Assembly: GCA_002269645.1 (NCBI GenBank)
Contig: NIVC01003045.1
Span: forward strand, 1 to 64,000
Direction of reading: 5' to 3'
DNA length: 64,000 bases
Source of the DNA: Macrostomum lignano
Taxonomy: Eukaryota
Shown: piece after piece, positions 6,474-48,511 of the stretch
Position numbering within the stretch: position 1 is the stretch's first letter
How the letters are laid out: the number at the start of each line of letters is the position of its first letter
Made by a program: the position numbers and the translations under genes
The notes under the pieces: generated by a model
Seen by the model: the letters and a program-made list of their open reading frames with translations, nothing else
Told to the model about the DNA's origin: nothing
Database searches by the model: none

Positions 6474-6752
6474 TCAAGAGCAAATGCCGCCCTGCGGATG
6501 GACTACAAGCGAGGGATCCTTCAGGTCCACGCCTTGGTGGTGCATGTCCTCCTGCTTGAAGCTGCCCAGCTGCTCCATGTGGCCCATCAGCATGGCTCCA
6601 TGATGGTGCAGGCCGTGATGATGCTGCTGGTGAAGCTGATGGTGAGCCATGGCTGGACTGACTGACTCGGCTGACACGTTGTCCTCGGATGACCTTGTCC
6701 TGGTCTGCAGCTTCTTCTTCTTCATTCGACGGTTTTGAAACCAGACTTTCAC
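6474..6752 (-). CDS. Post2: Post2 posterior Hox gene, exon 3 (homeodomain helix 3 [14 protein letters not shown], His-rich C-terminus, TGA at 6474-6476)
   Basis: Acceptor cccgcAG at 6753-6755; phase 0 matches the exon 2 donor; WFQNRRMK motif. Confidence 0.93.
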   Translation of the reverse strand: MKVWFQNRRMKKKKLQTRTRSSEDNVSAESVSPAMAHHQLHQQHHHGLHHHGAMLMGHMEQLGSFKQEDMHHQGVDLKDPSLVVHPQGGICS

Positions 6753-7301
6753 CTGCGGGCGAGTGAGCGGGACAATCTCCATCATAGTGAGTCTGACGGA
6801 CTTTTAGGACATTCCACATGATAAAAAAGTGTTCTTTTTAATAAAAGGTTCGCAATCAAAACAGGATAGATCTACTGGGGTATTGTGAGACAGACTTTTA
6901 AGGATTCTACTCTCATCGCCACTACAAGTAGTTGACCAACCCTTACGAAAGGGTAGCGATAGGGTCAGATTGGTTCGAGTAGACTCCCACAGTCACAATC
7001 ACTTGTTACGGCTGGGGTTAGGGTTAGGGTTGCACACCCAAAGCACCCATATTATTCCCCGCGGCGAGTCCGAGGTTTATTGTCAGTTCTATCTATGACA
7101 ATGCATCACAGAATCGCGAAAGAAGTTCCTGATTAATCTGAAAATATGATGATCCACTCGCTTTCCATAAATAATGAGCTGTGTTTTTTAGACTACGTTC
7201 TCCGTTCTGTCATAGACTATTTTTTCAAATTATTTGTATAATATACTTAGTAGTCTACTTCCTAAGGCGACTATCAATAGTATGAAACGAGCATGGCTTA
7301 C

Positions 7302-7438
7302 CTGACGCTCAGTCAGATGCAGTTGGCAAGAAATTTCCCATCGTTTTTGCCGGGTGATGTAGGCGTTCATGAGGAACTCGCGCTCTAGCATGGCCGTCTG
7401 GTAGCGAGTGTACGGCTTGCGCTTCTTGCGGCTGCGCA
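7302..7438 (-). CDS. Post2: Post2 exon 2 (homeodomain residues 1-44, [43 protein letters not shown])
   Basis: Carries the lophotrochozoan Post2 signatures [11 protein letters not shown] and [15 protein letters not shown]. Acceptor gcAG at 7439-7441 (phase 1); donor GTAAG at 7301, at the canonical homeobox intron position 44/45. Confidence 0.95.
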
Positions 7439-7459
7439 CTGCGGGGGCGGCGGGTGGGG

Positions 7460-8310
7460 GAGAATCAGGTGAGGGCGGGTGGGGAATCACGTGAGAAGGG
7501 GTGGGGAATCAGGCGAGAGCGGGTGGGGAATCACGTGAGAAGGGGTGGGAATTGTAGATTTGTTTTAGGGGTAAGAAAAGGCTTGGCCACTGCGCGGCCT
7601 TGAGCGCCAATATATATATTTAGAAATCGATATTTGCGTGGGGTGGAGTTGCGCCTGATAAACAAGAAGCGTGCAAGCTAATTGGCTGCAGAGCGACCGG
7701 GGCAGGCATTGTACACTTGAGGGTCAGAGAGTTAAACGGTGTACGGCCAACAGGAATCAGGTGAGGGCGGGTGGGGAATCACGTGAGAAGGGGTGGGGAA
7801 TCACGTGAGAAGGGGTGGGGAATCAGGTGAGGGGGGTGGGGAATTGTGTGAATTGCAGGAGGATAATCAGGGGGAATTGCGGGAGGGGAATCAGGGATAT
7901 TTGCTGGAGAGGAATCAGGGTATTGCTGGAGAGGAATTAGGGGTATTGCTGGAGGGGAATCAGGGTATAGCTGGAGGGGAATCAGGGGTATTGCTGGAGG
8001 GGGATCTGGTGAATTGCGAGAGGGGGATCTGGTGAATTGCGAGAGGGAAAGCGGGTGAATTGCGGAAGGGGAATCAGGGGAATTGCGGGAGGATAATTAG
8101 GGGTATTGCGGGAAGATAATCAGCAGGGGAAGTGCGGGAGGTGAATCAGGGGAATTGCGGGACGTAAATCAGGTGAATTGCAGGAGGGGAATCAGGGGAA
8201 TTGCGGGAGGTGAATCAAGCTAATTGCGGGAGGTGAATCAGGTGAATTGCGGGCGGTGAATCAGGGGAATTGCGAGGGGGGATCACGTGAATTGCGGGAG
8301 AGGAATTGGG
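7460..8310. repeat. Degenerate GGGAAT(C/T)-based repeats in Post2 intron 1 (7460-7550 duplicated at ~7755-7840)
   Basis: Recurrent ggggaatcagg / gaattgcgggag units; a ~90-bp direct duplicate. Confidence 0.75.
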
Positions 8311-45154: not shown

Positions 45155-45612
45155 AAAGTGGCGCCTCTGAGGGCTCAAAGTGGCATTCCCGACTGACACA
45201 AAGTGGCACCTCTGAGGGTTCAAAGTGGCAATTCCCGACTGACACAAAGTGGCACCTCTGAGGGCTCAAAGTGGCAATTCCCGACTGACACAAAGTGGCA
45301 CCTCTGAGGGTTCAAAGTGGCAATTCCCGACTGACACAAAGTGGCACCTCTGAGGGTTCAAAGTGGCAATTCCCGACTGACACAAAGTGGCACCTCTGAG
45401 GGCTCAAAGTGGCAATTCCCGACTGACACAAAGTGGCACCTCCAAGGGCTCAAAGTGGCATTCCCGACTGACACAAAGTGGCACCTCCAAGGGCTCAAAG
45501 TGGCATTCCCGACTGACACAAAGTGGCACCTCTGAGGGCTCAAAGTGGCATTCCCGACTGACCAAAGTGGCACCTCTAAGGGCTCAAAGTGGCAATTCCC
45601 GACTGACACAAA
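45155..45612. repeat. 45-46-bp tandem repeat in Hox3 intron 1 (~10 units)
   Basis: Unit caaagtggcacctctgagggctcaaagtggcaattcccgactgaca. Confidence 0.92.
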
Positions 45613-47545
45613 GACTCTTGTGCTGATAAATTGTGCCGCAACAAATATCTGAATATTTCAATCTCATTATTAGCATTGGATCAGGGGAATCTGTACGCAC
45701 ATAAAGTTGGTCTGCCTCCCCATAAATACCATATTGCATTTATCAGTTGGTAGCAAGGCTGCTTATACCAACCGCAATAAATTCAAGATTCTCTCGCTTA
45801 AAACGATAATTATAGTTCAGCGCGGCATCGACAGCGCCAACAGCCTCGGCAACAAACTGGAAAAATGGGGGGGCTGCTCCATCTTCTCCGGGAACGAGAG
45901 GCTGGATGGCTGCAGCCGAATCAGGTCTGGGGGTCATAAATAACTCAGAGAGGAGAGGGGGCGGCAGCGGCGCACCTTGCCAGAGCCTTCATCTTGGCCA
46001 GCTAAGGGAAAAGTCTTGCCGCGCTTTGCCTTGACTGCATGGCAAATTGTTGTGAAGTCAAGCAAAATTTATTAACCTTCATGGATTCTGGCTGCGGGTT
46101 GATGTAGCTTACGCTCGTAGTTTCCTGGCAACTATTAGAATAGTTTAACTGTCCCACAACTAGTAAGGATAATTGGATAAAAATTTTAATAAATTAAAAT
46201 CACTTATTTTATTGATTAGATTTTTTGTTTTTCAGTCTAATTTAAGTATGTCATTCTATCGCAACACCCCAGATGTTTTTTTTCAGATTGGAAATGCAAA
46301 ATTGCATATCAACAAACAAAAACCAAAGTTCCCTGACCTTCAAGATAACTTCTTTTGATGCAAAAATATGAAAGCGATTTAAATCTGGCTTCAGAATCCT
46401 GGAATTTTAGAATTGCTTTTAATTTAAAAAACAACCCGCGGCCCCCTCTACCGTTACAAAATCGAAATTCAAGCGTCCATGCCACTTCGAACTGCGGGTT
46501 GCCATGCGGCCAATACGGAAAAGATTAAGGCGGAGGAAATGATTGATGCCGGTGTCAAACTTGATTGCAGTCGCTACCTCCCCTCCCCTCCGACCTCACG
46601 GGGTTTGAAGTCGAGTTTTGCTTCCGCAGTAGTCAGCCGTGCGCATCGCTGCTGCTGCTGTACACTACGTGTGCGATTGTGCAGTCCGATAGCCACCACA
46701 AGATAATACACAGCTAACTTACTATCAGGGGCAAAGTTTTAAAGAGGCCACGCAAACAGCTGCTGTGCTTAATTTTCCAACTGATATTTTCCTGTCAAAT
46801 GTGCGGATTGGAGGAGAGGCGGAAAGGAGATTAGGGAACCTATAGAATGAGAGGGTAATTGTAACCCAGGAAGCATCCACTATGCATGCAGGCGGAGGCA
46901 CTTTGCGACACCACAGCTCCACTTCAAACTGTCGATTGTTTGTAGCTTATGGACACCTCGCTACACTGCAGTTGCTTGGCTGATTGGCCCTAGCTAGAAG
47001 CAGCGAGAGACGGCTTAGATACTGAAGTCATGAAAAGTTTCTTGCGCCAGACTATACTCACAATTAGTTTTGTGGCTCGAGTACGAAAATCGGGCTTGGG
47101 CCATCCAAGGCACAGAGTGTACATATGCCTGACGGTCAGACAGTCAGGCCCCGCTGAACACCTTTTGCGAGTGTGTGCTTGTGTACGTATCTAATTCCTC
47201 TCGTGAGCTGACTAACTAACACCTACTGAAGCTGAAAATGAAGCTCGGCTGCTTAGGTCCATGGCCAATTAAAAAAAAACATATTATATACTTTGTGCAT
47301 CATCTGTCATGTGCAACCCAGAGGCATTGCCTGTTGTTCTGTTGCCTGTTGTTGAAAGATCAGAAAAAAGCGATTGGCTGAAGCCATAAGTCACAGGCTG
47401 ACGTAGGCATCAAACGGGGTTAAAATTTCAAATGTTTCATCTCTGGGGGAAGTCATCTTTGCCTTTGCGTCACCTTTGCTTTCGCCTCTGGGTGAGTATT
47501 CGCATCGCATTAACTACCAACGCCTTCAATCCGAACATTTCACAG

Positions 47546-47819
47546 ACTCGGCCATCGGCTCGGCATCGAAGCGGATTCGCACGGCCTACACAAACGCGCA
47601 GCTGGTCGAGCTTGAGAAGGAGTTCCACTTCAACCGCTACCTGTGCCGGCCAAGACGCATCGAACTGGCCAATTCGTTGAGTCTCAGCGAGCGCCAGATC
47701 AAGATCTGGTTTCAGAACCGGCGCATGAAGTACAAGAAGGACCAGAAACTGGTCAGGGAGCAGGACATGCGGCTGCGGCACCTCAGACAGGCCGACGGGC
47801 CGCCCCATCTTATTAAAGA
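47546..47819 (+). CDS. Hox3: Hox3 exon 2 (complete homeodomain [60 protein letters not shown])
   Basis: Paralog-group-3 residues ([26 protein letters not shown]; MKYKKDQK). Acceptor tttcacAG at 47544-47545; donor GTAAGT at 47820 (phase 2). Confidence 0.95.
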
Positions 47820-48135
47820 GTAAGTACGGAATTAAATGACCGTTTCAGCTACTAACAGTAGCGGATGCGTAAGTAATGCCATTAATCGATGAATTATTAT
47901 TAATAGACTGGTAGAAATTGCATTAAACTACGAGTACATTAACAAGTTGTATGATATTTATACCTAGCTTTATGCAAAAAACTGGATCCAGCTATAAAAG
48001 TGCTAAAGCTGTCATTAAGCAGCCAATTTTTTAAATATGCACATATGCTGTAGGACCTGAAGCAAAGTTAAACAGGACAAGCCACGTCAATCAAAGAAAT
48101 CCAAAGAAAAGTTCAATTTGCCGTCTCCTCTGCAG

Positions 48136-48511
48136 AGAGAAGTACATGCACATCGCTGGAATGATACCGATTGCTTATCCGGGCTGCGAGCAGCAGCAGC
48201 AGCAGCAGCAGCATCTTCAACAGCAGCAGCAGCAGCATCAGCAGCATCTTCAACAGCAGCCGGAATTGACCGAGTGCGGCAGTCCCGAAGCTGGGGCCAC
48301 TGACTATCAGCCGATTCTGTGCCCAACTCAGCAGCACGACTTGATGGCGCCTCAGCAGCAGCATGCTAGGCAGCAGTTCTTCCCTCTGCACCTGCAGGAG
48401 TCTCGAGACGGCAAGCAGTCAGCCGGTTACTTGCAGCAGCAGCAGCAGCAGCAGCAGCAGCAGCAGCAACAGCAGCCAGGTCAGCAGCAGTTCCGACTTC
48501 CTTTTGTTTAA
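48136..48511 (+). CDS. Hox3: Hox3 exon 3 (Gln-rich C-terminus, TAA at 48509-48511; total protein ~305 aa)
   Basis: Acceptor ctcctctgcAG at 48134-48135; a phase-2 join gives GAA GAG AAG TAC ATG, in frame with ORF 48146-48511. The three exons sum to 918 nt. Confidence 0.78.

What the first reader, a model, noticed from the sequence alone, without database searches (positions are those of the whole stretch)
6474..48511. Minimal rearranged Hox remnant: Post2 <- (miR-993) -> Hox3, head-to-head
Seen: a Post2 gene on the minus strand and a Hox3 gene on the plus strand have their starts ~32 kb apart. No other homeobox or YPWM exon lies between them, and TRP genes and transposons lie outside. Established: in ordered protostome clusters Hox3 and Post2 are normally co-oriented and separated by Hox4, Hox5, Lox5, Antp, Lox4 and Lox2, and flatworm Hox genes are generally regarded as dispersed. 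Inference: an inversion or translocation joined an anterior-class and the most posterior Hox gene around a shared upstream region, keeping the Hox3-miR-993 linkage. The two genes may share, or be insulated from, one regulatory landscape.
Basis: partly seen in the sequence, partly recalled or inferred. Interest (0 to 1): 0.82.

Follow-up and report, generated by a model that had tools for sequence, protein, structure and literature searches.

The report
Flatworm Hox3–Post2 gene pair with miR-993
In the model flatworm Macrostomum lignano, whose body-patterning Hox genes are reported as scattered, an anterior-type gene (Hox3) and a posterior gene (Post2a) lie about 32 kb apart facing away from each other, with the Hox-associated microRNA miR-993 between them; this is a real but modest leftover of the ancestral Hox cluster.

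Summary
A three-exon Post2 gene lies on the minus strand (stop 6474, start 9504 or 9585). A three-exon Hox3 gene lies on the plus strand (ATG 41923, stop 48511). The starts are about 32.3 kb apart, and no other homeobox or YPWM exon occurs in the 64 kb.

The spliced Post2 model contains, residue for residue, the published Macrostomum lignano Post2a sequence (187 aa). The Hox3 model matches the published M. lignano Hox3 transcript for 144 aa across the first splice junction. The organism is therefore M. lignano, and both genes were already known as transcripts.

A miR-993-like hairpin lies at 32262-32355, 9.6 kb upstream of Hox3, on the side where Hox4 lies in ordered clusters. It is on the minus strand, the same strand as Post2a and opposite to Hox3.

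About 46% of the interval is minisatellite arrays, and it holds no Pfam-detectable gene. TRPV-like genes flank it on the left and decayed transposons on the right.

The best reading is a residual two-gene Hox fragment made by loss or dispersal of the central genes plus at least one inversion. An assembly chimera cannot be excluded from this window. I found no paper describing this linkage, though the key genome paper was not readable. Interest is moderate.

The parts
6474..6752 (-). Mlig-Post2a exon 3: last 16 homeodomain residues ([14 protein letters not shown]...) plus the C-terminal tail, with TGA at 6476-6474
   Evidence: ORF and sequence. Pfam Homeodomain profile positions 39-57, E 3e-7. 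Identical to the published Post2a.
6753..7301 (-). Intron (549 nt, GT-AG, phase 0) splitting the Post2a homeobox between homeodomain residues 44 and 45
   Evidence: The junction TERQ|VKVW is confirmed by the published transcript. Opisthorchis Post2 has an intron at the same position.
7302..7438 (-). Mlig-Post2a exon 2: homeodomain residues 1-44 ([43 protein letters not shown])
   Evidence: phmmer E 3.8e-27 against a Post2 homeodomain. Identical to the published transcript.
8724..9585 (-). Mlig-Post2a exon 1, Gly/Ala/Gln-rich N-terminal region. The likely ATG is at 9504, because the ORF upstream to 9585 runs into a tandem repeat. The donor is GGCG|GTACGT, phase 1.
   Evidence: The last 50 residues and the exon 1-2 junction (DSAAG-V-RSRKK) match the published transcript.
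9586..41883 (.). Shared upstream interval between the two divergent genes. 46% is high-scoring minisatellite or microsatellite arrays (22 arrays). It contains no homeobox, no Pfam-detectable ORF and no assembly gaps.
32262..32355 (-). mir-993-like precursor hairpin. The predicted 5p arm is 32351-32330 (GUCCUGUACAUGCAAGCUUUUG). The 3p arm is 32286-32264 (GAAGCUCGUAUCUACAGGAAUAC).
   Evidence: Exact pattern hit. Fold of -40.9 kcal/mol, z = -3.2. The lower stem extends in a longer context. The 3p arm matches 17 of 18 positions of tsp-miR-993 (PMC3212509) and shares the first 9 nt with afu-miR-993 (PMC5101901). There was no Rfam hit.
41923..42190 (+). Mlig-Hox3 (this paralog) exon 1: ATG, Gln-rich N-terminus, hexapeptide IYPWM at 42013-42027, and donor G|GTAAGT in phase 1. 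The published transcript contig starts at about 41884. A TATA-like TAATATAA lies at 41835-41842; its promoter role is inferred only.
   Evidence: 100% identical to the published Mlig Hox3 transcript, including the translated 5' leader.
47546..47819 (+). Mlig-Hox3 exon 2: the complete homeobox ([60 protein letters not shown])
   Evidence: Pfam Homeodomain E 1.5e-23. The phase-1 acceptor matches exon 1. The junction GDA-D-SAIG is confirmed by the published transcript. NJ groups it with Lottia Hox3 at 91%.
48136..48511 (+). Mlig-Hox3 exon 3: Gln-rich C-terminal tail ending ...RLPFV, then the stop
   Evidence: The donor GA|GTAAGT at 47820 and the acceptor ctcctctgcag| at 48135 keep the frame. The paralogous published transcript has the same LIKE|EK junction and a ...RSPFV end.
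519..4953 (+). Left flank: two tandem TRPV-like channel ORFs (519-1670 and 2866-4953)
   Evidence: The best representative hit is an M. lignano ankyrin-repeat protein. Relatives carry Ank and Ion_trans domains. A family profile hits TRPV5/6 structures at E 3e-36. The two copies are 3.3 kb apart.
50760..64000 (.). Right flank: decayed retroelement and transposon remnants, plus a direct repeat of at least 3.1 kb at about 100% identity (52377-55490 and 60886-64000)
   Evidence: RVT_1 fragments in two adjacent frames, E 0.03 each, and an HTH ORF at 58805-59086. Repeat extent.

Best explanation
[quoted passage not shown] It carries a genuine two-gene Hox fragment. Post2a (minus strand) and one Hox3 paralog (plus strand) are transcribed away from each other. 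Their shared upstream interval is about 32 kb and rich in minisatellites. It contains a mir-993 homolog 9.6 kb upstream of Hox3 and 22.7 kb upstream of Post2a, on the Post2a strand.

Shown:
- The gene identities, exon structures, orientation and spacing.
- The absence of other homeoboxes in the window.
- The miRNA-like hairpin.

Inferred:
- The Hox3 plus mir-993 segment is ancestral cluster DNA, because mir-993 sits on the Hox4 side of Hox3 in other protostomes.
- Post2a became its neighbour because flatworms lost Hox5, Antp, Lox2 and Post1. No Hox2, Hox4 or Hox5 was found among the M. lignano transcripts. The remaining central genes (Lox5-like and Lox4) left the interval.
- An inversion of the posterior block would turn Post2 head-to-head with Hox3. 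The opposite strand of mir-993 needs a further small inversion, unless mir-993 was antisense ancestrally.
- With 32 kb between the starts, each gene most likely has its own promoter. A TATA-like box lies about 45 bp before the 5' end of the Hox3 transcript contig. Shared or insulated enhancers remain an open question.
For: - Organism and gene identity. The published M. lignano Post2a sequence (187 aa) is an exact substring of the spliced model, across both junctions. The published Hox3 is identical for 144 aa across the exon 1-2 junction (PMC4815179 Table S1).
- Orthology. The homeodomains are 84% identical to Lottia Hox3 and 80% to Lottia Post2, against at most 77% and 58% to Lottia genes of other Hox groups. 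NJ bootstrap is 91% for Hox3 and 69-73% for Post2. Named hits are Hox-B3/D3 and Post2 of annelids, a nemertean, a phoronid and molluscs.
- Only three homeobox segments and one YPWM occur in 64 kb.
- mir-993. There is an exact 17-specified-base core match on the 3' arm of a stable hairpin. The mature sequence agrees with published miR-993 sequences. [quoted passage not shown]
- The window has no N gaps. Most of the arrays in the interval have their own repeat unit, and the longest is 2.7 kb.
- Two Post2 paralogs and at least two Hox3 sequences exist in M. lignano. This fits duplication of a linked pair in the reported whole-genome duplication.
Against: - The published summary is that M. lignano lacks a Hox cluster (citing Wasik et al. 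2015, which I could not read).
- 46% of the interval is tandem arrays, and M. lignano assemblies are known to be difficult. A chimeric join cannot be excluded from the sequence alone.
- mir-993 is on the strand opposite to Hox3, which a single inversion does not explain.
- Rfam gave no mir-10-family hit, and no small-RNA data were available, so expression of the hairpin is unproven.
- No comparison species could be examined. The age of the linkage is therefore unknown.
- The flanks show no further Hox gene within 6 kb downstream of Post2a or 15 kb downstream of Hox3.
Confidence: 0.7

Rival explanations
1. Assembly artefact. The contig wrongly joins a Post2a locus and a Hox3 locus somewhere inside the repeat-rich 10-41 kb interval, and the two genes are not neighbours in the animal.
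For: 46% of the interval consists of 22 tandem arrays, including three simple (ATAG)n-, (CTGT)n- and (ATCT)n-type microsatellites of about 400 bp. The right flank has a direct repeat of at least 3.1 kb at 100% identity, 8.5 kb apart, which could itself be an assembly duplication. The literature calls flatworm genomes notoriously repetitive and hard to assemble.
Against: The window has no gaps. Arrays are at most 2.7 kb, are separated by unique sequence, and mostly have distinct units. Long reads should therefore span them. mir-993 lies on the expected side of Hox3, so at least the segment from 32 kb to 48 kb looks like coherent cluster DNA.
Confidence: 0.12
2. Secondary juxtaposition. The two genes had already been dispersed, and a later translocation or segmental duplication placed them side by side in the M. 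lignano lineage. The arrangement would carry no ancestral or regulatory meaning.
For: Flatworm Hox genes are generally atomised. The orientation is not the ancestral one. The mir-993 strand does not fit a simple history. The flanks are TRPV-like genes and transposon debris rather than other Hox genes. M. lignano has a recent whole-genome duplication and many rearrangements.
Against: Bringing two members of one ancestral cluster within 32 kb by chance, out of a genome of several hundred Mb (my recollection of the size, not checked), is improbable. Both genes and mir-993 derive from the same ancestral cluster, so intrachromosomal inversion and gene loss is the simpler history.
Confidence: 0.15
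3. The hairpin is not a miRNA gene. It would be a by-product of the adjacent minisatellites, which share the CCTGTAC and TCTACA motifs, and its resemblance to miR-993 would be incidental.
For: A 29-copy 22-nt array (31588-32226) and a 41-nt array (31078-31289) lie immediately 3' of the hairpin and carry UCCUGUAC and GUCUCUACA motifs. There was no Rfam hit. The terminal loop is long, about 37 nt.
Against: The exact match of 17 specified bases has a chance expectation of about 1e-5 in 128 kb of two-strand sequence (my estimate). Even with 3 mismatches allowed the expectation is 0.10. The other arm also resembles my recalled miR-993-5p (CCUGUA...GCUUUUG). The match is on the correct arm of a hairpin whose geometry allows 2-nt overhangs. 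It lies where mir-993 is expected relative to Hox3. The arrays more probably derive from the hairpin region than the reverse.
Confidence: 0.1

Closest known systems
Atomised or disorganised Hox complements of flatworms (Schmidtea mediterranea, Prostheceraeus crozieri, Schistosoma)
   Same: The same phylum and the same reduced gene set. No Hox5, Antp, Lox2 or Post1 is reported in flatworms, and Post2 is duplicated. Occasional residual pairs on one contig are reported. S. mediterranea had one contig with more than one Hox gene. P. crozieri had two Hox9-13 genes on one scaffold.
   Different: Here the linked pair is an anterior-type (PG3) gene and a posterior gene, not two posterior paralogs. They are divergent, and a Hox-cluster miRNA lies between them. 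M. lignano itself is cited as lacking a cluster.
Ordered spiralian Hox clusters (Lottia gigantea, Capitella teleta) with embedded mir-10-family miRNAs
   Same: Orthologous Hox3 and Post2 homeodomains. mir-993 is part of the lophotrochozoan Hox complex.
   Different: In ordered clusters the genes are co-oriented, and Hox3 and Post2 are separated by Dfd, Scr, Lox5, Antp, Lox4 and Lox2. Here none of these is present, and Post2a is inverted relative to Hox3.
Arthropod mir-993 locus between Hox3 and Dfd
   Same: The 3p mature core is the same (17 of 18 positions with tsp-miR-993). The hairpin lies upstream of Hox3, on the Dfd side.
   Different: It is on the strand opposite to Hox3. There is no Dfd/Hox4 neighbour. 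It has a long terminal loop and no Rfam hit. Expression was not shown.
Published M. lignano Hox transcripts (Currie et al. 2016, Table S1: Mlig Hox3, Post2a, Post2b)
   Same: Post2a is identical. The first 144 aa of Hox3 are identical.
   Different: The published Hox3 contig diverges from the window after ...RRIELA (homeodomain 93% identical, C-terminal tail very different). It is therefore a second paralog or a chimeric assembly. That paper gave no genomic positions for M. lignano.

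Membership tests
Hox paralogy group 3 (Hox3) | Homeodomain closest to PG3 and grouping with Hox3 in a tree | tested here: met
   84% identity to Lottia Hox3 against at most 77% to Lottia pb and dfd. NJ bootstrap is 91% with Lottia Hox3. The best named hits are Hox-D3, Hox-B3 and spider Hox-B3a.
Hox paralogy group 3 (Hox3) | Hexapeptide (YPWM) upstream of the homeodomain in the same transcript | tested here: met
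   IYPWM lies at 42013-42027 in exon 1. It is joined in phase to the homeobox exon, and the junction is confirmed by the published transcript.
Lophotrochozoan Post2 | Homeodomain with the Post2 pattern ([11 protein letters not shown]...[29 protein letters not shown]), grouping with Post2 and not Post1 | tested here: met
   80% identity to Lottia Post2 and 89% to Smed-Post2b. The Post2 clade has 69-73% bootstrap, with Post1 outside. Named hits include Platynereis, Maculaura, Phoronopsis, Antalis and Elysia Post2. The sequence is 100% identical to published Mlig Post2a.
mir-993 (MIR-10 family) | Mature 3p sequence with the GAAGCUCGU...CUACAGG core | tested here: met
   GAAGCUCGUAUCUACAGG lies at 32286-32269 on the minus strand. 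The published comparisons are tsp-miR-993 GAAGCUCGUUUCUACAGG and afu-miR-993 GAAGCUCGUUUCUAUAGAGGUAUC.
mir-993 (MIR-10 family) | Stable precursor hairpin with the mature sequence on the 3' arm and an arm pairing that allows 2-nt overhangs | tested here: met
   -40.9 kcal/mol, z = -3.2, and 0 of 200 shuffles folded as well. The lower stem extends in a 161-nt context. The long loop is atypical.
mir-993 (MIR-10 family) | Match to a curated covariance model | tested here: not met
   There was no mir-10-clan or mir-993 hit at gathering score or at E <= 5 in Rfam 15. I did not check whether Rfam holds a dedicated mir-993 model.
mir-993 (MIR-10 family) | Small-RNA reads from both arms (the miRNA annotation criterion) | not testable with these tools
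   No M. lignano small-RNA data were available here.
mir-993 (MIR-10 family) | Position between Hox3 and Hox4/Dfd, sense to the Hox genes | tested here: inconclusive
   The hairpin lies 9.6 kb upstream of Hox3, on the Hox4 side. No Hox4 is present, and the hairpin is antisense to Hox3. That the ancestral orientation is sense rests on my recollection, not on a test. Attempts to check it in other spiralian loci failed.
Organised Hox cluster | Neighbouring Hox genes co-oriented and in paralogy-group order | tested here: not met
   Post2a is on the minus strand and Hox3 on the plus strand. They are divergent, and PG3 is adjacent to Post2 with no central genes between.
Organised Hox cluster | No non-Hox protein-coding genes between neighbouring Hox genes | tested here: inconclusive
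   No Pfam domain was found in any of 10 non-repeat ORFs of at least 100 aa in the interval or the Hox3 intron, and there was no homeobox. Lineage-specific genes without Pfam domains cannot be excluded.
TRPV-type TRP channel (left-flank ORFs) | Ankyrin repeats followed by a six-helix ion-transport domain homologous to TRPV | tested here: met
   Homologs carry Ank and Ion_trans domains. A profile of the window ORF plus 11 homologs hits TRPV5/6 structures at E 3e-36. The ORF alone has no Pfam or PDB hit, so membership rests on the profile.

The most novel reading that the evidence does not exclude
The Post2-mir-993-Hox3 arrangement may be an old, selectively maintained micro-synteny. It would predate the M. 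lignano genome duplication and be shared with other macrostomids or early-branching flatworms. In this reading mir-993 is transcribed with, or from the same regulatory domain as, Post2a. The divergent pair would share one regulatory landscape. This would be a functional constraint holding an anterior-type and a posterior Hox gene together in an otherwise atomised complement. It would also be the first mir-993 reported from Platyhelminthes.
Probability: 0.15. Interest if true: 0.65.

Novelty: new member of a known kind. Interest (0 to 1): 0.42.

Why it matters
Flatworms are the textbook case of Hox cluster disintegration, and M. lignano is cited as having no cluster. A surviving Hox3-mir-993-Post2a block would mean that disintegration was not complete in an early-branching flatworm lineage.

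It also offers a compact locus of about 42 kb for a specific question. Do linked Hox genes in an atomised complement still share enhancers, chromatin domains or miRNA regulation? M. lignano is amenable to transgenesis (abstract of PMC5173321), so the question is experimentally tractable.

The locus also suggests that mir-993 was retained in at least one flatworm. I found no paper reporting miR-993 from a flatworm.

The gain is incremental. Both genes were already known, and residual Hox pairs are reported in other flatworms.

Tried and rejected
- Rfam at gathering score and at E <= 5 gave only AT-microsatellite and minisatellite artefacts (mir-1277, Gut-1) and no mir-10-family hit. A canonical miR-10 pattern with 3 mismatches gave nothing.
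- Protein homology searches did not identify the organism. No near-identical protein is in the database. Exact look-ups of window ORFs found nothing. The organism was identified from a paper's supplementary table instead.
- I tried to establish the ancestral orientation of mir-993 in other spiralians. The Lottia and Capitella loci I fetched turned out to be pb loci. A compact Dfd-to-Hox3 locus from an unidentified ENA assembly, a JGI contig and a spider Hox3 locus contained no mir-993 match.
- I tested miR-993-3p seed matches (CGAGCTT) as a hint of Hox targeting. There were 10 sites against 7.9 expected. The one site within a transcript model (47607, Hox3 exon 2) lies in the homeobox coding sequence (LVELEKE). 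None lies just downstream of either stop, so there is no evidence for targeting.
- I considered alternative splicing as the cause of the divergent published Hox3 3' half. I rejected it because the divergence starts inside exon 2 with no splice site, and no second Hox3-like homeobox exists in the window.
- The bacterial-type promoter and terminator scan around the hairpin is not meaningful for an animal genome.
- I considered a non-flatworm origin, because the Post2 homeodomain is up to 80% identical to nemertean and other non-flatworm Post2 but only 68% to Opisthorchis. The exact transcript identity rules this out.
- Wasik et al. 2015 and Tsai et al. 2013 are not held in the library.

Full report
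**What is in the sequence**

The window is gap-free animal DNA with GC about 0.47, and it is dense in micro- and minisatellites.

The minus strand carries a three-exon posterior Hox gene.
- Exon 1 is Gly/Ala/Gln-rich. Its ORF runs from 9585, but the upstream part overlaps a tandem repeat, so the ATG at 9504 is the more likely start. It ends at 8724.
- Exon 2 (7438-7302) encodes homeodomain residues 1-44.
- Exon 3 (6752-6474) starts with [14 protein letters not shown] and ends at the stop at 6474.

The plus strand carries a three-exon Hox3 gene.
- Exon 1 runs from the ATG at 41923 to 42190 and holds IYPWM at 42013-42027.
- Exon 2 (47546-47819) holds a complete homeobox (Pfam E 1.5e-23).
- Exon 3 (48136-48511) is a Gln-rich tail.

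All four introns are GT-AG and in matching phase. The finding's end coordinates, 6474 and 48511, are exactly the two stop codons. The two ATGs are 32.3-32.4 kb apart.

**No other Hox exon**

I ran a six-frame phmmer scan with Hox3, Post2, Antp, En and Prd homeodomains. It found only the three homeobox segments listed above; every other hit had E > 1. YPWM occurs once. Ten non-repeat ORFs of at least 100 aa, nine from the interval and one from the Hox3 intron, have no Pfam domain. High-scoring tandem arrays cover 46% of the 32.3 kb between the starts.

**Organism and gene identity**

Database searches returned no near-identical protein. Table S1 of Currie et al. 2016 (PMC4815179) lists Macrostomum lignano transcript ORFs.
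- Its Post2a sequence (187 aa) is an exact substring of my spliced model and spans both splice junctions.
- Its Hox3 sequence is identical to my model for 144 aa, including the translated 5' leader and the exon 1-2 junction.
- After ...RRIELA the published Hox3 diverges, but it keeps the LIKE|EK junction and a ...PFV end.

The window is therefore M. lignano. The minus-strand gene is Mlig-Post2a. The plus-strand gene is one of at least two Hox3 paralogs, or else the published contig is a chimera of two. The reported genome duplication of M. lignano and the existence of Post2b (95% homeodomain identity) fit duplicated copies.

**Orthology**

I compared the two homeodomains with the full Lottia Hox set and the planarian set from the same table.
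- The plus-strand homeodomain is 84% identical to Lottia Hox3 and at most 77% to any other Lottia group.
- The minus-strand homeodomain is 80% identical to Lottia Post2, 89% to Smed-Post2b, and at most 58% to non-posterior groups.
- NJ bootstrap support is 91% for the window Hox3 plus Mlig Hox3 plus Lottia Hox3 group. It is 69-73% for the Post2 group, with Post1 outside it.
- Named database hits agree.

**The miRNA**

GAAGCTCGTATCTACAGG lies at 32286-32269 on the minus strand. It sits on the 3' arm of a hairpin at 32355-32262, with -40.9 kcal/mol and z = -3.2. Published miR-993 sequences are GAAGCUCGUUUCUACAGG in Trichinella and GAAGCUCGUUUCUAUAGAGGUAUC in Anopheles.

mir-993 belongs to the miR-10 family, and its Hox position is conserved among protostomes, including the Capitella and Lottia clusters. 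In arthropods it lies between Hox3 and Dfd.

In this window it is 9.6 kb upstream of Hox3, which is the Hox4 side. It is on the opposite strand to Hox3 and the same strand as Post2a, whose start is 22.7 kb further on. Rfam gave no hit, and expression could not be tested. I found no paper reporting miR-993 in a flatworm.

**Flanks**

On the left are two tandem ORFs whose family profile hits TRPV5/6 structures at E 3e-36. On the right are a frameshifted reverse-transcriptase remnant, an HTH ORF, and a direct repeat of at least 3.1 kb at 100% identity.

**Interpretation**

The most economical history starts from an ancestral co-oriented cluster. Flatworms lack Hox5, Antp, Lox2 and Post1. The M. 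lignano transcript list contains only Hox1, Hox3, two central genes (Lox5-like and Lox4) and Post2. Only about two genes therefore need to leave the interval.

Inverting the posterior block would place Post2 head-to-head with Hox3, with mir-993 between them. The strand of mir-993 then needs one more small inversion, unless it was antisense ancestrally. I could not establish the ancestral strand.

At 32 kb apart the genes most likely have separate promoters. A TATA-like box lies about 45 bp before the 5' end of the Hox3 transcript contig; its promoter role is inference only. Shared regulation remains untested.

**Rivals**

- Assembly chimera (about 0.12). The interval is repeat-rich. Against this, the sequence is gapless, the arrays are short and mostly have distinct units, and the 32-48 kb part looks like coherent cluster DNA.
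- Recent secondary juxtaposition (about 0.15).
- A spurious hairpin generated by the neighbouring arrays (about 0.1). The exact core match, the correct arm and the expected position all argue against it.

**Novelty**

Both genes were published as transcripts. Reviews and the brachiopod Hox paper state that M. lignano lacks a Hox cluster. No searchable paper describes this linkage or a flatworm mir-993.

Residual Hox pairs are known in S. mediterranea and P. crozieri. I therefore class this as a new member of a known kind, of moderate interest.

Noticed in passing
window 6753-7301; L006 about 670-2100: The Post2a homeobox is split by an intron between homeodomain residues 44 and 45. The Opisthorchis viverrini Post2-like gene has an intron at exactly the same position (...LHLSERQ|gt, about 1.44 kb, then ag|[11 protein letters not shown]). 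Non-flatworm Post2 hits are single ORFs across the whole homeodomain. This looks like a flatworm-wide derived intron.
   Followed up: partly
window 31078-31289 and 31588-32226 (minus strand, immediately 3' of the hairpin): Two minisatellites lie next to the mir-993 hairpin. One is 29 copies of GTCTCTACAATCCTGTACTAAT; the other has a 41-nt unit. They carry GUCUCUACA, which I recall as the arthropod miR-993-3p core, and UCCUGUAC, which matches the hairpin's 5' arm. The arrays may have grown out of hairpin-derived sequence.
   Followed up: partly
window 47670-48511 compared with the published Mlig Hox3 transcript: The published M. lignano Hox3 contig equals the window for 144 aa and then diverges inside exon 2. 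The homeodomain is 93% identical and the tail is very different, but the junction and the C-terminal PFV motif are conserved. A second Hox3 paralog must exist, or the published contig is a chimera of two paralogs.
   Followed up: partly
window 52377-55490 and 60886-64000: A direct repeat of at least 3.1 kb at about 100% identity, with an offset of 8509-8511 bp, runs off the end of the window. Inside it is a 197-bp tandem array (55184-56468). It could be a very recent segmental duplication, two copies of one element, or an assembly duplication.
   Followed up: partly
window 121-1670 and 2866-4953 (+): Two tandem TRPV-like channel ORFs lie 3.3 kb apart, with 96-98% identical 5' parts. They had no close match in the protein databases; the best hit was 41% identical to an M. 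lignano ankyrin-repeat protein. This looks like a fast-evolving, lineage-expanded TRPV-like family.
   Followed up: partly
window 9572-41499: The intergenic interval holds 22 separate high-scoring tandem arrays with periods of 4-175 bp and lengths up to 2.7 kb (for example a 41-bp unit in 66 copies at 19807-22526). Several of them produce long spurious ORFs in all frames.
   Followed up: no
L003 1220-1819 and 10001-10462: A contig from an ENA assembly (ERZ25070725) carries a Dfd-like gene and a Hox3-like gene on the same strand, about 8 kb apart. No recognisable mir-993 lies between them. The organism was not identified.
   Followed up: no
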